The position numbers and the translations under genes were made by a program. Shown piece after piece: positions 19,535-49,310 of a stretch of 64,000 bases of DNA. Position 1 is the stretch's first letter. Each line of letters starts with the position of its first letter. Under the pieces are notes generated by a model. That model worked only from the letters and a program-made list of their open reading frames with translations. It was not told where the DNA came from and ran no database searches. The stretch lies in IMG/VR virus record IMGVR_UViG_3300032562_000004, positions 124,001 through 188,000 of that record; one strand, given 5' to 3'.

Positions 19535-19599
19535 ATCTCCTTTTGTTTACGGTCGTTACTCTGACCTTGGACCCAAGTACTTCTGACTTTGTGATAGGG

Positions 19600-19935
19600 T
19601 TTGTGGAACGATTGTTTCTGTTGCCAAGTACAATCGCTGGAAAACTCCGACAGGTGTTTAGGCTGCCAGTGCGTAACTTTCATCGTTAGCGTTTAATTTA
19701 ATTTGCTTCTTCGACCGAGTGTCCTCAATCCTAACGGCTTTCGCTTTGCCGATTCTCCATTGTTCTAATTATTGCCATGTCGAAACCGGTCGCCCACATC
19801 AAAAACATATTAGCTGGTAATACTCACTCCATTAAAAACCTGCCGTTGTGACTGGTTCACTAATATGCTTATGGTGTAGGCGGGGAGAATCGAACTCCCG
19901 TCCACAACAACTTTCAAACAACTTCAACGAATGTG
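19600..19935 (-). ncRNA. ssrA: Circularly permuted (two-piece) tmRNA, tag ANDESYALAA (outer ends approximate)
   Basis: T-arm + CGCCTACACCA (ends 19872), a 74-nt intervening segment, then GTGGGCGACCGGTTTCGAC (G1=19797); G3.U70; tag frame 19690-19658. Confidence 0.92.
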
Positions 19936-20052
19936 TATCAATAATGGTCCTAATCTATAACTAGTATAAACATCGCCATTATTAAATCTAACTTGGCCCC
20001 AATGAAAAATTCCACCACGGTACCAATGTGTCTTATATACTCTAATCTTCAT
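19924..20052 (-). CDS. 42 aa hypothetical protein
   Basis: Own translation MKIRVYKTHWYRGGIFHWGQ...; co-oriented, fills the gap. Confidence 0.35.
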   Translation of the reverse strand: MKIRVYKTHWYRGGIFHWGQVRFNNGDVYTSYRLGPLLIHIR

Positions 20053-38959: not shown

Positions 38960-39035
38960 TGGTGGAAATGGAGGGATTCGAACCCCCGACCTTGTCCGTA
39001 TGAAGGACCTGCTCTACCAACTAAGCTACATTTCC
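38960..39035 (-). tRNA. tRNA anticodon CAT (elongator Met or Ile2)
   Basis: Cloverleaf, loop TTCATAC, CCA. Confidence 0.85.
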
Positions 39036-39522
39036 GTAAATGAAAAAAGGCGTAGAGTATTATCCCCAAACCTCTTTATATTTTTCTAAAGCCTTTTTTC
39101 TTGCTAACACAAGTCTAATTTTCATTTCATCCGAAATGTCTTGTACATCAGCTGTTTGGTCGACTAGCTCTGGACGACGATATCCAATTTGAAACTCTGG
39201 AGTTTCATCGTAATAGTCATCATCGTTATCATTTAAAAATACACGAGCTAACGGTCGCTTAGGTAGATGTAGTTTTGCCTTCGTTCTTGTGATGATAGCA
39301 CGGACCCGACCGTTTGCTGTCGCAGTTGGGGCAACCCATTCTAAGCGATTGGAATCCAAAGACTGTGCCAACTCGGCTGAGCTTTTCTGGCTTATTATTA
39401 CTAAAGTCGCGAGTGTTAATACTTGTAACAGGGTGGGTATACATGAGTTTCTCCTAAGCATACTATATTAACGCTTAAGAGTTACACTAAGTTGACAATA
39501 ATATTGCCAAAATTATATCTTT

Positions 39523-39597
39523 TGGTCCGGCGTACAGGAATCGAACCCATATTCATCGGGTAGAAGCCGATTGTACTATCCATTGTACTAACGCCAG
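39523..39597 (-). tRNA. tRNA-Arg(TCT)
   Basis: ATCGG-CTTCTAC-CCGAT, CCA. Confidence 0.9.
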
Positions 39598-39600
39598 CTT

Positions 39601-39718
39601 ATATTGAAACACACTAGAAGAACCGTGACGAGCGGATTCATTTACCTTCCTCCAACAAGCGGAAGCCCATACCGGTCAGATATGGTGCCACTACTAAGGA
39701 TTAATGTGCTTCAATATA
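39601..39718 (-). ncRNA. Structured spacer RNA closed by a long inverted repeat
   Basis: ATATTGAAGCACATT / AGTGTGTTTCAATAT enclosing two hairpins. Confidence 0.5.
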
Positions 39719-39721
39719 AAC

Positions 39722-39797
39722 TGGTCCAGGCGCAGAGATTTGAACTCTGAAAGTTCGGGTAAAAGCCGAATATGATAGCCAGTTTCATCACACCTGG
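39722..39797 (-). tRNA. tRNA-Lys(TTT)
   Basis: TTCGG-CTTTTAC-CCGAA, CCA. Confidence 0.85.
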
Positions 39798-39906
39798 ATT
39801 GTTTTTCTTGCTTGCGTAGAGCTTTATTGCTCTTGCGGTGCGAGCCCGCTTTCCGTTTATTTGCTAGTACAGCAAATATATTTCTTGCTTTCATTTTACT
39901 TCTCCT

Positions 39907-40326
39907 TTAAAAATCTGTTAGTGGAACTAGTTCCTCTAAATTTACAACATCGGTCCAATCTTCAATATGGCCCGAGTAGTAACCGTTGTGTTCGTTGCGT
40001 ACTTCAAAATCAATATATCCACGGTTAGTGCGAATAGTAAAGAAGCCATCTTCGACTACTTCTGCGTATTCGTCATCTGTCTCAACATTGACCCACTCTT
40101 TTTCTTCTACAGCAGTAACTAACGCACCACGTAGCAAATCAAAAGTGTTACCTTCTCCAATTACATCTCTACCTTGAAAGTGATTAATGTAAACAGTATT
40201 ACAACAATCGCCACATACATAAAATCCTAATACTTCTCCTTCGATGGTACGAAATGCAACTCTATCATGGTCTTCGTTTAGGAAAATACCATTAATGCGT
40301 TTTCCAACTAGCTTGTTTAAAACCAT
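39907..40326 (-). CDS. Hypothetical protein inside the tRNA array
   Basis: GDCC and RNEHNGYYSG motifs; AGGAG RBS. Confidence 0.6.
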   Translation of the reverse strand: MVLNKLVGKRINGIFLNEDHDRVAFRTIEGEVLGFYVCGDCCNTVYINHFQGRDVIGEGNTFDLLRGALVTAVEEKEWVNVETDDEYAEVVEDGFFTIRTNRGYIDFEVRNEHNGYYSGHIEDWTDVVNLEELVPLTDF

Positions 40327-40358
40327 GCCATTCTCCTTTTAAAATTTAAAACATATTA

Positions 40359-40433
40359 GGGGTGACCTGTGGAATTCGAATCCACCCTATCGGAATCACA
40401 ATCCGAGGTGCTAACCGCTAACACTAAGGCCAC
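40359..40433 (-). tRNA. tRNA-His(GTG)
   Basis: TCGGA-TTGTGAT-TCCGA; C73; 3' end CCT rather than CCA. Confidence 0.88.
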
Positions 40434-40447
40434 ACCTAATATGTCTA

Positions 40448-40523
40448 TGGTGCACCCTCTTGGTTACGCTCCAAGCCATCCAGCTCTTAGAGCTGGCGCT
40501 TCCACTAGGTTAGCTTAGGGTGC
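40448..40523 (-). tRNA. Atypical class I tRNA, anticodon TAA (loop TCTAAGA)
   Basis: Perfect acceptor stem + CCA; C at position 33; T-loop AGCGTAA; short variable loop. Confidence 0.65.
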
Positions 40524-40739
40524 TCTACCTCTTGATATCCAACCATCATAGTTGTCGACATCTTTTACTTCGTCTACTCCTAGTTTACTCGTGCAGTTAG
40601 GATTTTCACTACACATCGTAACAAAGGTATGTCCAAGGCTACGATGGAATTGAGACGCAGATAATGCCATACTTAAATCATCAAACACTTCTGCGTGTGG
40701 TTTATTATCCACAGTATAATAAACTTTAAACATATTCAC
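40515..40739 (-). CDS. Hypothetical protein; stop codon inside the next tRNA
   Basis: FVTMCSENPNCTSKLGVD motif. Confidence 0.55.
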   Translation of the reverse strand: MNMFKVYYTVDNKPHAEVFDDLSMALSASQFHRSLGHTFVTMCSENPNCTSKLGVDEVKDVDNYDGWISRGRAP

Positions 40740-40749
40740 TTTCTAAAAT

Positions 40750-40823
40750 TGGTACCTCGTGATGGTGTCGAACCACCGAGACCCACTTGTAAGGAGGGCA
40801 GTATACCGTTTACTTAACGAGGC
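40750..40823 (-). tRNA. tRNA-Val(TAC)
   Basis: Loop CTTACAA, CCA. Confidence 0.88.
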
Positions 40824-40826
40824 ATT

Positions 40827-40900
40827 TGGTAGAGGTACTAAGATTTGAACTTAGACTAATGCCTTCAAAGGGCACGGTGCTGCCGTTACACTATACCTCA
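40827..40900 (-). tRNA. tRNA-Gln(TTG)
   Basis: GTGCC-CTTTGAA-GGCAT, CCA. Confidence 0.9.
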
Positions 40901-40906
40901 ACAGTT

Positions 40907-40980
40907 TGGTTGCGGGTTCTGGAATCGCACCAGAGACTAGGGCTTATGAGACCCTCGAGATACTCCTTCTCCAACCCGCG
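40907..40980 (-). tRNA. tRNA-fMet(CAT)
   Basis: C1:A72 mismatch, loop CTCATAA, T-loop TGCGATT. Confidence 0.85.
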
Positions 40981-40986
40981 ATAGAT

Positions 40987-41061
40987 TGGTGGACCGTGGG
41001 AGAGTCGAACTCCCTACTCCTGCGTGCAAGGCAGGTGTGTTCCCAATTATACCAACAGCCC
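40987..41061 (-). tRNA. tRNA-Ala(TGC)
   Basis: G3.U70, loop CTTGCAC. Confidence 0.92.
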
Positions 41062-41493
41062 TAAATTCTTTTGCCATTCATTAATAAATGGCAATACTTC
41101 GTGTTTCCATTTGCTATGAACCATCTCGTGATGATTTGGGCATAGCGGTATTAAATTACTGGGCTTGTTATTTTTTCTATTCTCATCAATATGATGGATA
41201 GCAACAATCTTGTCAAACCCGCAAATAATACACTTGTGTTCGTGATGCTGTTTTGCTATAGTCGCATAATGTGTGGCATTGTCTTTCCACCAAGAGCTTC
41301 TGTTATTAGCACAACTTCTACTACAAAATCTAGCTGTTTCAAATTGTTTGGTATTTTGTCTACCAGTCCAAACAAATTCTTTATTACAGCATCCGCAAAT
41401 TTTAGTATGATCTTTTACTGGACCATACTTTCTATTTACTTTTGCTATTTGACCAGCTTTATAAGATTCTGTATAATATTTTCCGTTATTCAT
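41047..41493 (-). CDS. HNH endonuclease
   Basis: CIICG...IHHIDENRKNNKPSNLIPLCPNHH. Confidence 0.85.
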   Translation of the reverse strand: MNNGKYYTESYKAGQIAKVNRKYGPVKDHTKICGCCNKEFVWTGRQNTKQFETARFCSRSCANNRSSWWKDNATHYATIAKQHHEHKCIICGFDKIVAIHHIDENRKNNKPSNLIPLCPNHHEMVHSKWKHEVLPFINEWQKNLGLLV

Positions 41494-41508
41494 AATTTTT
41501 AATTACTT

Positions 41509-41582
41509 TGGAGCGGGTAGAGAGAATCGAACTCTCAACTAAACCTTGGCAAGGTCTCGGGTTACCATTACACCATACCCGC
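41509..41582 (-). tRNA. tRNA-Gly(GCC)
   Basis: Loop TTGCCAA, TCCA end. Confidence 0.9.
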
Positions 41583-41586
41583 AAAT

Positions 41587-42102
41587 TTATAAAATACTTT
41601 CTAATAACTTCCTAACATCTAATGTAATAGGTTGTAAGTTATTTACTACTGTAGAATCTTTACATATCCAATTAGCAACAGGCAGTCCTGGTTTTAAATT
41701 AAACTGCCCGCTTTTTGTTTCAAGATTCCTATTACATTCGTCCCACGATAATTGCGATATAGCAAACTTATGCGGGGCTGACTGAATACATAACAAATAA
41801 TCAAATGATTGATTAAATTTAGACTTATTAGTATTTTGAAGTGAAACTCGTCCTGTAATTGTATTCTTCGGTGAAAACATATCAGCTACTGATTTAAATT
41901 CATATTTTGTATTAGTTTCTAAATCAATGCTATCATATCCTTCCTGGTCAACATACTTTAATCTTCCGTCTGTTGCTTTCTCTAATGCTAATGCTAGAAC
42001 TTCGCCTTTGAGAAATCTATAAGATGGCTTATTAAGTTGCTTGCCAAGTTTAACTAAACAATCAACTACGGGTTGATAATCTACATCCTTCAAAAAACTC
42101 AT
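41587..42102 (-). CDS. Putative PD-(D/E)xK endonuclease between two tRNA-Gly genes
   Basis: GYDSIDLETNTKYEFKS (D...ExK). Confidence 0.5.
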   Translation of the reverse strand: MSFLKDVDYQPVVDCLVKLGKQLNKPSYRFLKGEVLALALEKATDGRLKYVDQEGYDSIDLETNTKYEFKSVADMFSPKNTITGRVSLQNTNKSKFNQSFDYLLCIQSAPHKFAISQLSWDECNRNLETKSGQFNLKPGLPVANWICKDSTVVNNLQPITLDVRKLLESIL

Positions 42103-42116
42103 AAGTTCCTTTAATT

Positions 42117-42190
42117 TGGAGCGGGATAAGAGAATCGAACTCTTGACCGAAGATTGGAAATCTGCTGTTTTACCATTAAACTAATCCCGC
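42117..42190 (-). tRNA. tRNA-Gly(TCC)
   Basis: Loop TTTCCAA, TCCA end. Confidence 0.9.
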
Positions 42191-42192
42191 AT

Positions 42193-42375
42193 TGGTGTCG
42201 TAACGGCAGGGCCCTTCAGGATGAGTTACGACGTTACTACATTGAGGCATTGCACCGTAGCTTACGCTACCCCCATCAACTGCCTCAAATTTTGTGTAGG
42301 GCTTCCACCTACTCCCACCTCGCTTTAAAGTCTGCGTGTCCAAGACTTAGTTCTATTGCTAGAACTGAAAATGTT
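42193..42375 (-). ncRNA. Multi-hairpin RNA ending in an 8-bp stem + ACCA; not a cloverleaf
   Basis: Five hairpins; GTCGTAAC/GTTACGAC-ACCA. Confidence 0.55.
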
Positions 42376-42389
42376 ACTTTCTAATACTT

Positions 42390-42415
42390 TGGTACCTCGG
42401 GCCGGAATCGAACCG
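42390..42415 (-). pseudogene. Orphan 3' fragment (T-arm + acceptor strand) of a tRNA, probably Leu
   Basis: CGGTTCGATTCCGGCCCGAGGTACCA with no 5' half. Confidence 0.75.
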
Positions 42416-42427
42416 TTCGCGTTATAT

Positions 42428-42513
42428 TGGTGCCCGGAGCCGGACTCGAACCGGCATGCCTTTTAAAGCGGAAGATTTTAAGTCTTCTATGTATACCATT
42501 TCATCACCCGGGC
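42428..42513 (-). tRNA. tRNA-Leu(TAA)
   Basis: GAAGA-CTTAAAA-TCTTC, long variable arm. Confidence 0.92.
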
Positions 42514-42968
42514 GTTTGATCTATCTTGCGCCAACCTTTAGGTTTACCACCTTTTCTGTTAGCGGCAATTTTTGCCTTATGTTCTTCCGACTTTGGTTTT
42601 CCTTTATTTCCAGATCCATTAGTATTACCTAACATTACTTTGCTATTCATAGCAGATGCTTTTTCTAAACCATATTTTTCAACACGGCGTTCAAAAGGAT
42701 TTTTATGTGTCCCAAACTCTTTACCATCAATGATGATATTATCGTAATCAGTGCCCCAATACAAATGTTTTGGATTACTACATTTACTATTATTACAAGC
42801 ATGACACAACAGTATGCGCCCGCTTGGAATAGTTGTATCTAAATATTGTGCTAATACACCTTTATGATTAGTAGAGTTACCGCCGCGTTCACAACAAGGC
42901 TCGGATAAGTCTAAGTGAGCCCTGCGTTCTTCGCGAGATTTTTTAATAAATTCTTCTACTATAATCAT
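42504..42968 (-). CDS. HNH-type endonuclease with NUMOD3-like tail (start at MIIVEE)
   Basis: LCHACNNSKCSNPKHLYWGT..DN; GKPKSEEHKAKIA. Confidence 0.78.
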   Translation of the reverse strand: MIIVEEFIKKSREERRAHLDLSEPCCERGGNSTNHKGVLAQYLDTTIPSGRILLCHACNNSKCSNPKHLYWGTDYDNIIIDGKEFGTHKNPFERRVEKYGLEKASAMNSKVMLGNTNGSGNKGKPKSEEHKAKIAANRKGGKPKGWRKIDQTPG

Positions 42969-43009
42969 AACAGTATTATATAGTAATAATTTATTACTGT
43001 CAAATATTT

Positions 43010-43094
43010 TGGTGGGCAAGGAGAGACTCGAACTCTCACGCCTTGCGGCACTGGCTTCTAAGACCAGCATGGCTACCAATTACATCACTCACCC
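43010..43094 (-). tRNA. tRNA-Leu(TAG)
   Basis: CTGGT-CTTAGAA-GCCAG, long variable arm. Confidence 0.92.
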
Positions 43095-43559
43095 ATTTAC
43101 TACTTTTAAACCTTTTAATCTATCTGCGGCATAACTAGCCGCAAACGCTTGTGGCTTAACTAGTGGCTCTACATTACATACGCCACGGATATAACCAATA
43201 GCTTGACTTACAACATTAGAACTAGCATGAATTTCGTTAGGATTAATATCTAAATGTACTTCTACAGCACGACCTTCTAATACTTCTGCTAATTTTAAAT
43301 ACAATTCACTAACCTTAAACACTTCAGTCATTAATCTAGTATTAGGTTTATCACAACGGTCATAATCTCGTTCTCTAGTCACTTCACCAAATAACTTACA
43401 ACCGTGATTACCGTCAATATGTACAACAATAGCGGCTGTATAGTCAGCATACCATTCTTTGCCACGCTTAATTCGTTCAGAGTCCACACCAATATAAATC
43501 TTAGTGTCTGGACCTTGAGCATCTATAAACTTTTTGATTTGTGGTATGTTAAACTTCAT
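43089..43559 (-). CDS. RNase H-like YkuK/DUF458 family protein (start at MKFNIP)
   Basis: IYIGVDS...RLMTEV...EVHLDIN...KPQAFAASYAAD. Confidence 0.78.
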   Translation of the reverse strand: MKFNIPQIKKFIDAQGPDTKIYIGVDSERIKRGKEWYADYTAAIVVHIDGNHGCKLFGEVTRERDYDRCDKPNTRLMTEVFKVSELYLKLAEVLEGRAVEVHLDINPNEIHASSNVVSQAIGYIRGVCNVEPLVKPQAFAASYAADRLKGLKVVNG

Positions 43560-43580
43560 TATTCTCTTTCTTAAGTTATT

Positions 43581-43654
43581 TGGCGTCCCGGCAGGGATTC
43601 GAACCCCGACCAACAGTTTTGGAGACTGCGATGCTACCGTTACACTACCAAGAC
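43581..43654 (-). tRNA. tRNA-Trp(CCA)
   Basis: Loop CTCCAAA. Confidence 0.92.
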
Positions 43655-43674
43655 GTTGTACTACTATTTAATGT

Positions 43675-43751
43675 TGGTGCCTCAACCTAGACTCGAACTA
43701 GGGACCCTTGCGTTATCAACACAATGCTCTAACCAACTGAGCTATTGAGGC
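43675..43751 (-). tRNA. tRNA-Ile(GAT)
   Basis: Loop TTGATAA. Confidence 0.92.
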
Positions 43752-43752
43752 A

Positions 43753-43829
43753 TGGTGGGTCTTGAGAGACTCGAACTCCCAACCGCTAGTTTCGAAGACT
43801 AGAACTCTAATCCATTGAGCTAAAGACCC
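43753..43829 (-). tRNA. tRNA-Arg(TCG)
   Basis: CTAGT-CTTCGAA-ACTAG. Confidence 0.92.
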
Positions 43830-43834
43830 ATGTT

Positions 43835-43929
43835 TGGTAGTAGATATAGGTTATGATCCTATCCGTTGCAGCCCATCTGACCACTCTCCCAGGTTTATAA
43901 AACCCGGCCGCACACCAGTGCTATCTACC
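43835..43929 (-). tRNA. Atypical 95-nt tRNA, anticodon TAT (reads Ile AUA)
   Basis: 7-bp acceptor + ACCA; 4-nt D-loop; loop TTTATAA; long variable arm; T-loop ATCATAA. Confidence 0.7.
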
Positions 43930-43939
43930 ATATTGTTAT

Positions 43940-44026
43940 TGGCGGAAAGTATTGGAGTCGAACCAATCCACCCATTGCTGAATGACAGATTAGCAATCTG
44001 TTGCCTTGCCGCTCGGCCAACTTTCC
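43940..44026 (-). tRNA. tRNA-Ser(GCT)
   Basis: Loop TTGCTAA, G73, long variable arm. Confidence 0.92.
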
Positions 44027-44035
44027 TTAATTGTT

Positions 44036-44130
44036 TGGCGGAAGACAGAGGAGTCGAACCCCACCCGGCTCTTCACCAGGACCTGGTTTTCAAGGCCAGT
44101 CGCAGGACCATCCCCGCTGCATTATCTTCC
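44036..44130 (-). tRNA. tRNA-Ser(TGA) with enlarged D-arm
   Basis: Loop CTTGAAA, G73, long variable arm. Confidence 0.85.
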
Positions 44131-44136
44131 ATATTG

Positions 44137-44212
44137 TGGCTCCCCGAGCTGGGCTCGAACCAGCGACACCGTGATTAACAGTCACGTACTCTACCAACTG
44201 AGCTATCAGGGA
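44137..44212 (-). tRNA. tRNA-Asn(GTT)
   Basis: Loop CTGTTAA. Confidence 0.93.
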
Positions 44213-44220
44213 ATTGTTTT

Positions 44221-44298
44221 TGGTCTGTGAGGTAGGATTCGAACCTACAGCCTCCTGACTCCAGATCAGGCCGTCTACCAGATTGACATTACACACAG
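44221..44298 (-). tRNA. tRNA-Pro(TGG), non-canonical C33
   Basis: CCTGA-TCTGGAG-TCAGG; C1-G72, A73. Confidence 0.8.
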
Positions 44299-44306
44299 AT
44301 TGTTAC

Positions 44307-44381
44307 TGGTGCCCCAGAATGGAATCGAACCACCGAACCCGGCTTACAAGACCGGACCTTTACCACTAAGGATACAAGGGC
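44307..44381 (-). tRNA. tRNA-Thr(TGT)
   Basis: CCGGT-CTTGTAA-GCCGG. Confidence 0.9.
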
Positions 44382-44764
44382 TATTTTCTGTCTCTACCAT
44401 TTCCTTTATTTTTAGCCTTATATGTAGGCGTCTGACTATGGCAGTTTGGGCATATTGCCCTTAAATTTTCTTCTTTGTTATTTTTATAATTCCCGTCGAT
44501 ATGATCTAATTCTAGATATAGCGGAAGACCATTATGTTCTTCGATACCACAAATAAGACATTTATTATTTTGTTTTGCCCTTATATAACGATGTATATAC
44601 ATACTAGTTTGATGTTTGCCTCGAAGGCCATCTTCTAAACCAGACTTCCACCGTTCTATGTAACTTTGATGCATTCCTTCTAAGTAATGCTTGCCACAAT
44701 AGATTCTTTTTTCTTTATGTGTAAATACCGTAGAACATATTTTACAGCTATATTTTTGTAACAT
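44381..44764 (-). CDS. HNH endonuclease
   Basis: CLICG...LELDHIDGNYKNNKEENLRAICPNCHSQTPTY. Confidence 0.88.
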   Translation of the reverse strand: MLQKYSCKICSTVFTHKEKRIYCGKHYLEGMHQSYIERWKSGLEDGLRGKHQTSMYIHRYIRAKQNNKCLICGIEEHNGLPLYLELDHIDGNYKNNKEENLRAICPNCHSQTPTYKAKNKGNGRDRK

Positions 44765-44780
44765 ATAATCTTTCTTTAAC

Positions 44781-44857
44781 TGGCACTCTGTAGGGGTGAC
44801 GATCCCCTCTTACCAACGTGAAAGGCTGGGGTCCTAACCAACATAGACGAACAGAGT
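44781..44857 (-). tRNA. tRNA-Glu(TTC)
   Basis: Loop CTTTCAC; T-loop ATCGTCA. Confidence 0.85.
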
Positions 44858-44863
44858 ATAACT

Positions 44864-44941
44864 TGGCGTCCTCACCGGGTGTCGATCCCGGTCCTACACC
44901 TTGAAAGGGTGTTGATCTAGCCAATCGTAATCTATGAGGAC
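44864..44941 (-). tRNA. tRNA-Glu(TTC), second copy
   Basis: ACACC-CTTTCAA-GGTGT; T-loop ATCGACA. Confidence 0.85.
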
Positions 44942-44947
44942 ATAACT

Positions 44948-45022
44948 TGGCGACTCCAGGGAGTAACGATCTCCCTCTTCCTCTTAGACAGAGAGGTGTG
45001 CGTCCATGAACACTTTGGAGCC
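44948..45022 (-). tRNA. tRNA-Asp(GTC)
   Basis: CCTCT-CTGTCTA-AGAGG; T-loop ATCGTTA. Confidence 0.85.
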
Positions 45023-45027
45023 TTTGT

Positions 45028-45101
45028 TGGTTGCGGGCTAGGGTAACGCTCCCTATTCCATCCTGGCTTATGAGACCGGAGTGTGGCTATCACAACCCGC
45101 A
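45028..45101 (-). tRNA. Initiator-like tRNA-Met(CAT) with short D-arm
   Basis: GCGGG acceptor, loop CTCATAA, T-loop AGCGTTA. Confidence 0.7.
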
Positions 45102-45109
45102 ATAGTTGT

Positions 45110-45187
45110 TGGAGGAACGGGTCGGATTCGAACCGACGACTTTACAGTTTTGCAGACTGTTGCTTTGGGCCACTCAGCCACCGTTCC
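45110..45187 (-). tRNA. tRNA-Cys(GCA)
   Basis: Loop CTGCAAA, U73. Confidence 0.92.
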
Positions 45188-45196
45188 GTTATTGTT

Positions 45197-45281
45197 TGGT
45201 GGGTGGTCATGGAGTCGAACCAAGTATGCCAGAGGCGTCTGATTTACAGTCAGGTGCGGTCGCCAGTGCCGCTCACCACCC
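45197..45281 (-). tRNA. tRNA-Tyr(GTA)
   Basis: Loop CTGTAAA, long variable arm. Confidence 0.92.
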
Positions 45282-48616: not shown

Positions 48617-48736
48617 ACTAATAGTTCCTTTATGTTTATACTACTGAACAAATATTTATTGTTTTTTTGCGTTGGCCTGCAAAAATTGCTAGGTTTTGGC
48701 ATATTTTTAAGTTTAATATACGCATATAATGAAGTC

Positions 48737-48764
48737 AAAAGAATAGGGGTCGAAGCCCCTATCT
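48737..48764 (-). terminator. Terminator at the end of the tmRNA coding piece
   Basis: ATAGGGGC-TTCG-ACCCCTAT-TCTTTT. Confidence 0.8.
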
Positions 48765-49097
48765 GTTATTTTCTGTTTCGACGGATAACTCCGCAAAGCA
48801 GTGATTAAACTGCTAATGTTTGGCGTTGTGCTGTACGAGCAGAGAAACGAATTCCCTTACCTGAAACAGTTACTTCGCCTTTAGATGCGTTTGCATTTAA
48901 GTTTTTCGCTTGATTTACAGTCATCGCCTACTGTGTTGCCTCTTTCATTATCTCACCATGTCGAAACCTTGTCATCCCCACTGAAACATACTACAGCTTT
49001 TGGCCTCGCTACCGATAACTCGGTTCGGTAATATGCTTCGGTGGAGATGCCGGGAATCGAACCCGGGTCCACAGCGCCTTCACTACGAAGGAATTAC
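48765..49097 (-). ncRNA. ssrA: Second circularly permuted tmRNA, 29-aa tag ANASKGEVTVSGKGIRFSARTAQRQTLAV (outer ends approximate)
   Basis: GGACCCGGGTTCGATTCCCGGCATCTCCACC, an intervening segment, then GGGGATGACAAGGTTTCGAC (G1=48979); G3.U70; tag frame 48894-48805. Confidence 0.9.
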
Positions 49098-49106
49098 AAC
49101 AATTCT

Positions 49107-49310
49107 TTACAGCGGAAGAATATTTGATGCTTGCTTGCCTTTAGGGCCTGCCACTACATCGAATGTTACCGCTTGATTCTCTTTTAAACTCTTAAAACCA
49201 TTTGTGCTAATTGCGGAAAAATGTGCAAACAATTCCTCACCACCAGCATCGGGGGTAATAAATCCAAACCCTTTTGCATCATTAAACCACTTTACTTTAC
49301 CTGTTGCCAT
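49107..49310 (-). CDS. cspA: Cold-shock protein
   Basis: [18 protein letters not shown]...FAHFSAI...[10 protein letters not shown]. Confidence 0.95.

What the first reader, a model, noticed from the sequence alone, without database searches (positions are those of the whole stretch)
40515..44764. ORFs in the tRNA array keep their stop codons inside the next tRNA
Stop positions: 40515 ORF, TAA at tRNA nt 7-9; HNH 41047, TAA at tRNA-Ala nt 13-15; HNH 42504, TGA at tRNA-Leu nt 8-10; YkuK-like 43089, TGA at tRNA-Leu nt 4-6; HNH 44381, TAG whose G is G1 of tRNA-Thr. The 39694-39894 ORF runs through tRNA-Lys. RNase P cleavage at G1 would remove each stop and give nonstop mRNAs, the substrate of tmRNA, and this half encodes a tmRNA with a 29-aa tag. 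This may silence toxic nucleases or append a phage-specified tail. The 41587 ORF is an exception. Compaction plus stop-like triplets in tRNA 5' ends is the null explanation.
Basis: partly seen in the sequence, partly recalled or inferred. Interest (0 to 1): 0.75.

Follow-up and report, generated by a model that had tools for sequence, protein, structure and literature searches.

The report
Phage genes ending inside tRNA genes
In the tRNA gene array of a freshwater T4-like phage, several genes, mostly mobile nucleases, really do end inside the next tRNA gene; this is largely tight packing already seen in phages T4 and T5, but one small conserved gene fused to tRNA-Lys may truly be made without a stop codon.

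Summary
In detail: all five stop positions are exact, and the 39694-39894 ORF does run through tRNA-Lys. One of the "tRNAs" (40448-40523) is only a sub-threshold tRNA-like sequence.

The window comes from a 236-kb freshwater T4-like phage.

- **Baseline.** About 39% of same-strand ORF-to-ORF junctions in this genome overlap. About 33% of 216 unique ORF-to-tRNA junctions in 80 related contigs overlap. Overlap as such is therefore ordinary compaction, helped by stop-like triplets built into tRNAs (53% carry one at nt 8-10).
- **Homing nucleases exceed the baseline.** Homing-endonuclease-type ORFs end inside the tRNA in 17 of 19 cases. They are recent insertions, absent from the closest relative. 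The tRNA-Thr HNH keeps the same TA|G junction in a T5-like coliphage.
- **The stops look used.** ORFs reading into tRNAs use frames with an early stop (82% against 35% expected).
- **Prior art.** Limiting nuclease expression by tRNA processing was already proposed for T4 SegB and the T5 nucleases.
- **The exception.** The tRNA-Lys ORF is a real, widespread small basic protein. It never has a stop before the tRNA, and its stop position is unconstrained. It is a candidate programmed non-stop gene.
- **tmRNA.** The 29-aa-tag tmRNA is a conserved family.

No expression data exist.

The parts
38960..45281 (-). Co-oriented tRNA array. 25 tRNAs by default ARAGORN, plus tRNA-Ser(UGA) at 44040-44126 and a tRNA-like sequence at 40448-40523, with ORFs wedged between them. 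tRNA-to-tRNA spacers are mostly 1-13 nt. ORF starts lie 14-18 nt (41 nt in one case) after the preceding tRNA's 3' end.
44381..44764 (-). HNH homing-endonuclease gene (127 aa). Its TAG stop uses G1 of tRNA-Thr(UGU) as its last base. It is absent from the closest relative, where tRNA-Glu and tRNA-Thr are 5 nt apart. The same family and the same TA|G junction occur in T5-like coliphage HdH2.
44307..44381 (-). tRNA-Thr(UGU), the downstream partner of the HNH gene.
43089..43562 (-). RNaseH_like (PF04308, YkuK/DUF458) gene (157 aa). Its TGA stop is nt 4-6 of tRNA-Leu(UAG). The protein has the same length as in relatives, which keep their own stop upstream. Only 2 of 22 unique junctions of this family overlap.
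43010..43094 (-). tRNA-Leu(UAG). Its acceptor 5' strand pairs with the 3' strand through two G-U wobbles exactly at nt 4 and 5, the first two bases of the embedded TGA.
42504..42968 (-). HNH-like endonuclease gene (154 aa from ATG 42968; PHROG endonuclease/HNH families only). Its TGA stop is nt 8-10 of tRNA-Leu(UAA). In relative L007 the orthologue stops at d=15 instead.
42975..43003 (-). Perfect sigma-70-like promoter match (TTGACA, 17 nt, TATAAT) ending 6 nt before ATG 42968. If active, the HNH-like mRNA is the 5' leader of tRNA-Leu(UAA). A consensus match only.
42428..42513 (-). tRNA-Leu(UAA). The U8-G9-A10 triplet is also present in orthologous tRNAs that have no overlapping ORF.
41047..41493 (-). 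HNH endonuclease gene (148 aa). Its TAA stop is nt 13-15 of tRNA-Ala. It is absent from L007, which has a 110-nt spacer and a different tRNA-Ala there.
40987..41061 (-). tRNA-Ala(UGC) with the G3-U70 pair.
41587..42102 (-). 171-aa ORF of unknown function. It has its own stop 4 nt before tRNA-Gly(GCC) (d=-7), and the same holds in L007.
40515..40733 (-). 72-aa ORF of unknown function. Its TAA stop lies at nt 7-9 of the tRNA-like sequence.
40448..40523 (-). tRNA-like cloverleaf with a perfect 7-bp acceptor stem, CCA end, C33, a non-canonical T-loop and a short variable arm with anticodon UAA. It is below the default ARAGORN threshold and not found by Rfam.
39694..39894 (-). Small basic protein gene with an AGGAG Shine-Dalgarno 7 nt before the ATG. 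The conserved core is 32 aa and ends 1 nt before tRNA-Lys. The ORF then runs through the whole tRNA to a stop 28 nt beyond it. It belongs to a family of at least 721 protein clusters with no annotation.
39722..39797 (-). tRNA-Lys(UUU), the fixed downstream partner of the small basic ORF in about 80% of variants.
48714..49131 (-). Two-piece (permuted) tmRNA with a 29-aa tag ending LAV. The tag's frame and length are conserved in 44 viral contigs.
19567..19966 (-). Second two-piece tmRNA with a canonical degron-type tag, ANDESYALAA.

Best explanation
The array is a very compact tRNA-plus-mRNA operon of a freshwater T4-like phage.

- **What sits between the tRNAs.** Free-standing homing-endonuclease genes (three HNH-type) and a few other small genes occupy spacers that are otherwise only a few nucleotides long.
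- **Where each ORF starts and ends.** Each ORF starts about 15 nt after the previous tRNA's CCA, leaving room only for a ribosome-binding site. It runs to the first in-frame stop. That stop often lies in the first 15 nt of the next tRNA, because conserved tRNA nucleotides (U8-R9-R10; N13-A14-R15) spell stop codons.
- **Why nuclease genes do this most.** They are recent, minimal, selfish cassettes that insert directly beside the tRNA genes they are associated with, and probably target, as T4 SegB does.
- **How translation ends (inferred).** For these ORFs the embedded stop is read on transcripts still uncut by RNase P. RNase P cleavage competes with translation, strips the stop and shortens the mRNA's useful life. 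This lowers nuclease output, as a by-product or as mild negative control, as already proposed for SegB. Any resulting non-stop ribosomes go to the ordinary rescue systems.
- **The exception.** The small basic ORF fused to tRNA-Lys probably has its coding end set by the tRNA 5' processing site rather than by a stop codon.

Shown: coordinates, presence/absence in relatives, the statistics, the family-tRNA association, and that the small ORF is coding. Inferred: co-transcription, RNase P timing, and any tagging.
For: **Compaction baseline**
- About 39% of same-strand ORF-to-ORF junctions overlap and the median gap is 3 nt, by my own crude gene calls.
- 33% of 216 unique ORF-to-tRNA junctions overlap in 80 related contigs, with peaks at nt 8-10 (25 cases) and nt 13-15 (12 cases).
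- tRNA-intrinsic stops: 53% of 975 unique tRNAs have a stop triplet at nt 8-10, and in 25% the first stop in that frame is at nt 13-15. The same triplets occur in orthologous tRNAs with no overlapping ORF.

**Mobility and association of the nuclease genes**
- The nearest relative, L007 (94% YkuK identity), lacks both clear HNH genes.
- Nuclease-type ORFs overlap in 17/19 cases against 54/197 for the rest, p = 1.4e-7.
- Homologues of the tRNA-Thr HNH sit next to tRNA-Thr in all five hits I fetched that have a tRNA nearby (T5-like and jumbo phages and a Kyanoviridae phage); the sixth, DSL-LC03, has no annotated tRNA within 700 nt. HdH2 has the identical TA|G junction.

**The stops are selected**
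- 82% of 76 long frames entering a tRNA stop by d<=15, against 35% for the other frames of the same tRNAs, p about 9e-16.

**Precedent**
- T5 record: hegC, hegD, T5.057 and T5.069 overlap the downstream tRNAs by 6-24 nt.
- The SegB paper gives cleavage sites inside tRNA genes and the processing-based control idea (PMC2330249).
Against: - No transcript or protein data. The two 'RNA' runs contain only tRNA-sized pieces from relatives and nothing over the ORFs.
- Why nucleases overlap so much more often than other genes is inferred, not shown.
- The conserved TA|G junction between very distant phages could mean the arrangement itself is selected, which pure compaction does not predict.
- The junction counts are not phylogenetically corrected. 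My gene calls for the ORF-to-ORF baseline are crude.
- Promoter and terminator calls are consensus matches only.
Confidence: 0.6

Rival explanations
1. The stops are placed in tRNAs so that RNase P makes non-stop mRNAs by design. tmRNA, including the phage's own, then tags the products either to silence toxic nucleases or to add a phage-specified 29-aa tail.
For: - The geometry allows it.
- Nuclease-type ORFs overlap in 17/19 cases.
- The TA|G junction with tRNA-Thr is conserved between this phage and a T5-like coliphage.
- The phage carries two tmRNAs, one with a conserved long tag.
- A related idea is in print for SegB (PMC2330249).
- A relative encodes a stand-alone RF-1/GGQ-domain protein in its array.
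Against: - Frames entering tRNAs are strongly biased toward early stops. That bias would be pointless if the stop were always cut off first.
- Non-toxic genes (HSP20, radical SAM, phosphoesterase) overlap too.
- The overlaps are not conserved in the closest relative.
- Two-piece tmRNAs occur in 18/24 related records irrespective of these junctions.
- T5 shows the same overlaps relying on host tmRNA only.
- There are no expression data.
Confidence: 0.15
2. Homing-site geometry. The nuclease genes end inside tRNAs because each cassette sits within its own recognition site, which spans the spacer and the tRNA's 5' part. The insertion splits the site and makes the carrier genome immune. The overlap is a footprint of insertion, not of expression control.
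For: - The HNH family is tied to tRNA-Thr across unrelated phages.
- The filled-site versus empty-site comparison shows the cassette replacing a 5-nt spacer and abutting tRNA nt 1.
- SegB cuts inside tRNA genes (PMC2330249).
Against: - Free-standing homing endonucleases usually cut at some distance from their insertion point and rely on target polymorphisms for immunity (my background knowledge).
- In GAP32, XbC2 and AmPh_EK80 the homologue lies downstream of tRNA-Thr rather than upstream.
- Cleavage specificity cannot be tested here.
Confidence: 0.3
3. Translation-tRNA maturation feedback. Ribosomes running into the 5' part of a tRNA precursor unfold it and delay RNase P. Translation of the upstream ORF would then tune how much mature tRNA is made, for example a Lys-rich ORF upstream of tRNA-Lys sensing Lys-tRNA supply.
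For: - The small ORF is rich in Lys/Arg codons, always precedes tRNA-Lys(UUU) and always reads into it.
- ORFs sit directly on tRNA 5' ends throughout the array.
Against: - The small ORF's non-Lys residues (N, A-G-S-H, R) are invariant through synonymous changes, which points to a protein function.
- Variants away from tRNA-Lys keep the protein.
- I found no precedent and no data.
Confidence: 0.08
4. Nothing is there. The overlaps are accidents of ORF calling, or chance, in an AT-rich genome.
For: - The 55-aa TTG ORF 42176-42343, which also ends in a tRNA, has no relatives and lies over a tRNA 3'-half remnant, so some such ORFs are spurious.
- General overlap frequency equals the genome baseline.
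Against: - The overlapping ORFs have Pfam/PHROG domains or many homologues.
- The nuclease enrichment, the early-stop bias and the 40/40 tRNA-Lys fusions are far from chance.
Confidence: 0.03

Closest known systems
T4 SegB, a GIY-YIG homing endonuclease in the T4 tRNA gene cluster (PMC2330249)
   Same: - A free-standing nuclease gene between two tRNA genes, co-transcribed with them.
- The nuclease acts on tRNA genes of nuclease-free relatives.
- The authors proposed that a processing cut next to the stop codon during maturation of the downstream tRNA limits its expression.
   Different: - SegB is GIY-YIG, not HNH.
- In the T4 record its stop lies 5 nt upstream of tRNA-Arg rather than inside it.
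- No link to tmRNA was drawn.
T5 tRNA-region HNH endonucleases (F-TflI/II/IV; hegC, hegD) and T5-like phage HdH2
   Same: - HNH genes inside a tRNA array whose annotated CDS overlap the next tRNA by 14-23 nt.
- The HdH2 homologue of the window's tRNA-Thr HNH ends TA|G on G1 of tRNA-Thr exactly as here.
   Different: - A different virus family (Demerecviridae) and host, with only about 31% protein identity.
- No tmRNA gene is annotated in the T5 stretch I examined.
Programmed non-stop genes: arfA (RNase III cut inside the ORF) and lacI (transcript ends inside the ORF).
   Same: For the small ORF fused to tRNA-Lys:
- the conserved coding region has no stop before a conserved RNA-processing site;
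- the site lies at a fixed distance from the conserved core;
- whatever follows it is unconstrained.
   Different: - The processing element would be a tRNA cut by RNase P, not a hairpin or terminator.
- There is no detectable sequence similarity to E. coli ArfA (hhalign probability 0.1%).
- The function is unknown and tagging is untested.
tRNA punctuation with incomplete stop codons in animal mitochondria (my background knowledge)
   Same: ORFs abut tRNA genes, and tRNA excision defines the mRNA 3' end. The TA|G junction would leave an mRNA ending in UA.
   Different: Here the stop is complete in the precursor. Completion by polyadenylation is not known for phage mRNAs and was not tested.
Phage-encoded two-piece tmRNAs of aquatic T4-like phages (e.g. 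OM43 phage Melnitz; PMC9004378)
   Same: Permuted tmRNA genes in aquatic myophages. Most relatives here carry canonical ANDExFALAA-type tags.
   Different: This phage carries two tmRNAs. One belongs to a family with a conserved 27-31-aa tag ending [LF]AV. The one paper I read on phage tmRNAs does not mention such a tag.

Membership tests
Free-standing homing endonuclease genes of phage tRNA clusters (SegB / T5 heg type) | Recognisable homing-nuclease catalytic domain (HNH or GIY-YIG) | tested here: met
   - 44381-44764: Pfam HNH at 24.8 bits (cut-off 21.4) and PHROG HNH at E = 1e-22.
- 41047-41493: PHROG HNH at E = 2e-15; the Pfam HNH families score below cut-off.
- 42504-42968: PHROG endonuclease/HNH at E = 5e-8 to 3e-6 only.

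Free-standing homing endonuclease genes of phage tRNA clusters (SegB / T5 heg type) | Presence/absence polymorphism between close relatives at the same site | tested here: met
   L007 (94% YkuK identity) has tRNA-Glu and tRNA-Thr 5 nt apart, and has tRNA-Gly and tRNA-Ala with no HNH between them.
Free-standing homing endonuclease genes of phage tRNA clusters (SegB / T5 heg type) | Stable association of the nuclease family with one target gene across unrelated genomes | tested here: met
   Homologues of the 44381 HNH lie beside tRNA-Thr in HdH2, AmPh_EK80, GAP32, XbC2 and Ochrobactrum phage OC. DSL-LC03 shows no tRNA within 700 nt. This was not tested for the other two nucleases.
Free-standing homing endonuclease genes of phage tRNA clusters (SegB / T5 heg type) | Site-specific cleavage of the nuclease-free allele and preferential inheritance in mixed infection | not testable with these tools
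   Needs purified enzyme and phage crosses.
Programmed non-stop genes (ArfA-like logic) | No in-frame stop between the conserved coding core and a conserved RNA-processing site | tested here: met
   Holds for the small ORF only. In 40 of 40 unique cores fused to tRNA-Lys(UUU), no stop precedes the tRNA and the core ends 0-3 codons before tRNA nt 1.
Programmed non-stop genes (ArfA-like logic) | Downstream stop position and reading phase unconstrained | tested here: met
   All three phases are used (5, 21 and 14 cases). d ranges from 5 to 125. About 39% stop by d<=15, equal to the random-frame expectation of 38.5% and unlike the 82% seen for other ORFs.
Programmed non-stop genes (ArfA-like logic) | The ORF encodes a real protein | tested here: met
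   - Invariant residues use all synonymous codons, including both Ser and both Arg codon families.
- Entropy at codon position 3 is at least twice that at positions 1 and 2.
- An AGGAG Shine-Dalgarno precedes the ATG.
- 721 homologous protein clusters exist.
Programmed non-stop genes (ArfA-like logic) | Sequence homology to ArfA | tested here: not met
   - hhalign of the family profile against E. coli ArfA gives probability 0.1%.
- No hit in Pfam, PHROG, NCBIfam or PDB.
- No similarity to bS21 or bL34 either.
Programmed non-stop genes (ArfA-like logic) | mRNA 3' end at the processing site and tmRNA tagging of the product | not testable with these tools
   The public RNA runs hold nothing over the ORFs.
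Two-piece (permuted) tmRNA | Match to the permuted tmRNA covariance model, with a tag reading frame | tested here: met
   - RF04321 scores 118.4 and 104.3 bits against a gathering score of 47.
- ARAGORN gives the tags.
- The long tag's frame and length are conserved in 23 variants.
Mitochondrial-type tRNA punctuation with incomplete stop codons | Stop codon incomplete in the DNA and completed by polyadenylation | tested here: not met
   Every ORF here has a complete stop in the DNA. Only the TA|G case shares a base with the tRNA.

The most novel reading that the evidence does not exclude
The small basic protein gene at 39694-39894, and its hundreds of relatives in aquatic phages, is a programmed non-stop gene. 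RNase P cleavage at tRNA-Lys(UUU) nt 1 creates its mRNA 3' end, so its product is released or tagged only through ribosome rescue. Its level or form would then report on, or depend on, trans-translation in the infected cell. Rescue could involve the phage's own two-piece tmRNAs, one of which would append a conserved 29-aa peptide instead of a degron. This would be an RNase P/tRNA version of the ArfA principle, carried by a virus.
Probability: 0.3. Interest if true: 0.85.

Novelty: new variant of a known kind. Interest (0 to 1): 0.55.

Why it matters
- **Nuclease genes.** The result places a large set of uncultured aquatic phages alongside T4 and T5. Homing nucleases live in tRNA arrays, butt against their tRNA partners and borrow the tRNA's nucleotides as stop codons. 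This is a general rule for annotating phage tRNA regions, and it quantifies an idea so far mentioned only in a discussion section.
- **The small ORF fused to tRNA-Lys.** If RNase P defines its end, it would be a natural gene whose expression is wired through ribosome rescue in a virus. It would also give phage-encoded tmRNAs, whose role is unknown, a concrete substrate to test.
- **The long-tag tmRNA family.** It raises the question whether some phage tmRNAs add a functional peptide rather than a degradation signal.

Tried and rejected
1. **Transcript evidence.** Two searches of public runs found only lake-water DNA metagenomes and two nominal RNA runs. Laid on the array, those cover tRNA-sized pieces from relatives and have zero depth over the ORFs, so they say nothing about co-transcription or ends.
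2. **ArfA homology of the small ORF.** I thought I saw shared motifs by eye. hhalign against E. coli ArfA, bS21 and bL34 gave nothing. Pfam, PHROG, NCBIfam, a PDB profile search and the Atlas gave no named family. Rejected as homology and kept only as an analogy of logic.
3. **Specific link between the fused small ORF and phage tmRNA.** Records with the fused form carry a tmRNA in 16/26 cases against 0/6 for the unfused form. However, tmRNA is present in 18/24 related records, of which only 3 have the small ORF. It is a lineage trait, not a specific link.
4. **Gene calls from the public collection.** The look-up returned nothing for this protein, so the ORF-to-ORF overlap baseline rests on my own crude gene calling.
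5. **Megablast against cultured phages.** It found only tRNA-sized matches, so there is no close cultured relative.
6. **The 55-aa ORF 42176-42343**, which also ends in a tRNA. It was set aside as probably spurious: a singleton lying over a tRNA 3'-half remnant that L007 lacks.

Full report
**Context.** The window is bases 124001-188000 of a single 235,812-bp viral contig with 36% G+C. CheckV rates it complete. It encodes a T4-type major capsid protein (Pfam Gp23, E = 7e-142). The sequence occurs in many lake-water metagenomes. No close cultured relative exists. The genome has 31 tRNA genes and two tmRNA genes by default ARAGORN. Both tmRNAs match Rfam's permuted tmRNA model well above threshold.

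**Checking the observation.**
- All array genes are on the - strand.
  - HNH 41047: nt 13-15 of tRNA-Ala.
  - HNH-like 42504: nt 8-10 of tRNA-Leu(UAA).
  - YkuK-like 43089: nt 4-6 of tRNA-Leu(UAG).
  - HNH 44381: the last base of the stop is nt 1 of tRNA-Thr.
- The 41587 ORF stops 4 nt before tRNA-Gly.
- The 39694-39894 ORF runs through tRNA-Lys.
- The partner of the 40515 ORF is a cloverleaf at 40448-40523. ARAGORN reports it only at a relaxed threshold and Rfam does not report it. Its acceptor stem is perfect, but it has C33 and an odd T-loop.
- The domain labels are correct: HNH, an HNH-like endonuclease at PHROG level, and RNaseH_like PF04308.
- The array is extremely tight. tRNA-to-tRNA spacers are mostly 1-13 nt. 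ORF starts lie 14-18 nt after the preceding tRNA, 41 nt in one case.

**Is it more than chance?** I used three comparators.
1. *The genome itself.* With a simple gene call, about 39% of 285 same-strand ORF-to-ORF junctions overlap and the median gap is 3 nt. A stop inside the next gene is normal here.
2. *Relatives.* The YkuK-like protein retrieved 80 IMG/VR loci at 62-100% identity. Nearly all have it inside a co-oriented tRNA array.
   - These gave 277 unique ORF-to-tRNA junctions.
   - I define d as the first base of the stop minus tRNA nt 1. Of the 216 junctions with a stop between d=-30 and d=+45, 71 overlap the tRNA.
   - The peaks are at nt 8-10 (25 cases) and nt 13-15 (12 cases).
3. 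*The tRNAs.* Of 975 unique phage tRNAs, 53% spell a stop at nt 8-10, and in 25% the first stop in its frame is at nt 13-15. The same triplets occur in orthologous tRNAs with no ORF upstream.

**Two subsets exceed the null.**
- *Nuclease-type ORFs.* Clustering and annotating the junction ORFs gave these overlap counts: HNH cluster 9/10, HNH-like 2/2, DUF559 2/2, single HNHs 2/2, SegE-like GIY-YIG 1/1, PD-(D/E)XK 1/2. That is 17 of 19, against 54 of 197 for all other ORFs (Fisher p = 1.4e-7).
  - The YkuK-like gene overlaps in only 2 of 22 unique junctions. In relatives it keeps its own stop at the same codon position as in the window.
  - Non-toxic genes such as HSP20, a 632-aa radical-SAM protein and a phosphoesterase also overlap in some relatives.
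- *Frame choice.* Among 76 unique cases where a frame open for at least 60 codons reads into a tRNA, 82% stop by d<=15. The other frames of the same tRNAs do so in 35% (p about 9e-16). The frames are not random. They are those that terminate early, so the embedded stop is under selection.

**What the nuclease genes are.**
- The closest distinct relative (L007) lacks the HNH at 44381-44764. There tRNA-Glu and tRNA-Thr are 5 nt apart.
- L007 also lacks the HNH at 41047-41493, where it has a 110-nt spacer and a different tRNA-Ala.
- Its YkuK gene ends with its own TAA 8 nt before tRNA-Leu, and its HNH-like gene stops at d=15 instead of 7.
- The nucleases are therefore recent insertions and the overlaps are labile.
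- In the window the inserted cassette fills the slot from 16 nt after tRNA-Glu to the base before tRNA-Thr G1.
- Homologues of this HNH in cultured phages lie beside tRNA-Thr in all five of the six fetched hits that have a tRNA nearby, spanning T5-like phages, Mimasvirus jumbo phages and a Kyanoviridae phage. In T5-like phage HdH2 the annotated CDS ends TA|G on G1 of tRNA-Thr, exactly as here, at only about 31% protein identity.
- This family-tRNA association is what a homing endonuclease tied to a tRNA target would show.
- In the window's tRNA-Leu(UAG), the embedded TGA coincides with two G-U wobble pairs in the acceptor stem. ORF and tRNA have accommodated each other.

**Literature.**
- The T4 SegB paper shows that a GIY-YIG nuclease gene located between tRNA genes cuts inside tRNA genes of phage T2L.
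- Its discussion proposes that segB expression is restrained by a processing cut between its last sense codon and its stop codon during tRNA-Arg maturation. It proposes the same for the T5 tRNA-region nucleases (PMC2330249).
- In the T5 record, hegC, hegD, T5.057 and T5.069 overlap downstream tRNAs by 14, 23, 6 and 24 nt.
- In the T4 record, segB stops 5 nt before tRNA-Arg.
- The nuclease part of the finding is thus a new set of members of a known arrangement, with a previously voiced mechanism.
- Two-piece tmRNAs in aquatic T4-like phages are also on record (PMC9004378).

**The ORF that runs through tRNA-Lys.** This turned out to be the most interesting piece.
- *It is a real gene.* Its first 32 aa belong to a small, very basic protein family. 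Shared features include an RN motif near the start and an invariant A-G-S/T-H-x-K-x-x-K core.
  - A locus search returned 80 more contigs.
  - A protein search returned 721 clusters, all unannotated.
  - Invariant residues are encoded by all synonymous codons, including both Ser and both Arg codon families. Third-position entropy is at least twice that of positions 1 and 2.
  - The window copy has an AGGAG ribosome-binding site 7 nt before its ATG.
- *Its junction with tRNA-Lys is unusual.* Of 55 unique variants, about 44 lie immediately 5' of tRNA-Lys(UUU).
  - In all 40 unique fused cores the conserved region ends 0-3 codons before tRNA nt 1, and there is never a stop before the tRNA.
  - All three reading phases occur (5, 21 and 14 cases).
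  - The stop lies anywhere from d=5 to d=125.
  - About 39% stop by d<=15. That equals the random-frame expectation of 38.5% and contrasts with 82% for the other ORFs.
- *Reading.* This is the signature of a coding region whose functional end is the tRNA's 5' end. It fits an RNase P-generated non-stop mRNA, the logic known for arfA.
- *Caveats.*
  - Variants away from tRNA-Lys have their own stops and variable tails of 3-30 aa. One keeps the first ~10 nt of tRNA-Lys as its end. A tolerated junk tail therefore remains possible.
  - There is no detectable homology to ArfA, bS21 or bL34, nor to any curated family.

**The tmRNAs.** The 29-aa tag is not an ARAGORN artefact.
- A degenerate pattern built from the tag found 44 viral contigs.
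- ARAGORN called a permuted tmRNA with a long tag in 30 of the 44. Translating from the pattern in all hits gave 23 distinct tags; 22 are 28-30 aa and end [LF]AV, and one is cut to 16 aa.
- Because the pattern required part of the tag, the result shows conservation of frame and length, not frequency.
- Relatives otherwise carry canonical ANDExFALAA-type tags or long tags of 27-31 aa.
- Records with the fused small ORF carry a tmRNA in 16/26 cases, against 0/6 for unfused variants. However, 18/24 YkuK-sampled relatives carry one and only 3 of those have the small ORF. The tmRNA is a lineage trait, not a specific partner.

**Transcription.**
- Perfect sigma-70-type consensus matches lie upstream of the array (45979-45951), directly before the HNH-like ORF (43003-42975) and after the last tRNA (38956-38928).
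- No convincing terminator separates ORFs from tRNAs.
- These are pattern matches only. Public RNA runs gave no usable coverage.

**Verdict.**
- The general phenomenon is compaction plus homing-nuclease biology, already visible in T4 and T5. For those ORFs the embedded stops appear to be used. RNase P processing probably trims expression as a side effect or as mild control.
It remains a live and testable reading for the small ORF fused to tRNA-Lys.

Noticed in passing
window 48714-49131 (-); L170-L213: The long-tag two-piece tmRNA is a conserved family. There are 23 distinct tags in 44 viral contigs; 22 of them are 28-30 aa and end [LF]AV rather than the usual AA, and one is cut to 16 aa. The window's phage carries it in addition to a canonical-tag tmRNA at 19567-19966.
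   Followed up: partly
window 43835-43929 (-): ARAGORN calls a 95-nt 'tRNA-Ile(UAU)' with a long variable arm, a 3-bp D stem and A73. The Rfam tRNA model does not hit it. It is conserved at 94-96 nt in relatives (L001, L007, L009, L011, L014, L015). A type-II-like tRNA with an Ile anticodon is unusual.
   Followed up: partly
window 40448-40523 (-): A tRNA-like cloverleaf with a perfect acceptor stem and CCA end, but with C33, a non-canonical T-loop, and anticodon UAA on a short variable arm. It could be a decaying or non-standard tRNA.
   Followed up: partly
window about 42390-42427 (-): Directly after tRNA-Leu(UAA) lies what looks like the 3' half of a tRNA (T-arm, acceptor 3' strand, ACCA), inside a 237-nt insertion that L007 lacks. 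The 55-aa TTG ORF 42176-42343 over this insertion is probably not a gene.
   Followed up: partly
window 44040-44126 (-): tRNA-Ser(UGA) is missed by default ARAGORN. It is found at a relaxed threshold and by Rfam as a sub-threshold tRNA-Sec match (38 bits).
   Followed up: yes
L017:11004-11378 (+): A relative's tRNA array encodes a 124-aa stand-alone RF-1/GGQ-domain protein (Pfam RF-1, E = 7e-14). It resembles ArfB- or PrfH-type ribosome-rescue or release factors. None is found in the window's own genome.
   Followed up: partly
window 43003-42975, 45979-45951, 38956-38928 (-): Three perfect 12/12 matches to TTGACA-17-TATAAT on the coding strand. One ends 6 nt before the ATG of the HNH-like ORF, which would make that mRNA nearly leaderless.
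   Followed up: no
genome C1:62032-63224 (outside the window): A second, small tRNA cluster (Met, Gly, Tyr, Asn, Trp) duplicates specificities of the main array. No long ORF reads into these tRNAs.
   Followed up: partly
L220 (Acidovorax phage ACP17, NC_041997: 151751-151864): The only cultured-phage homologue of the small basic protein lies in an unannotated gap between two CDS, with no tRNA nearby and no obvious ATG start.
   Followed up: partly
L060, L067, L042 (relatives): ARAGORN calls tRNAs with anticodon CUA (labelled Pyl, i.e. amber-suppressor-like) directly downstream of array ORFs in some relatives.
   Followed up: no
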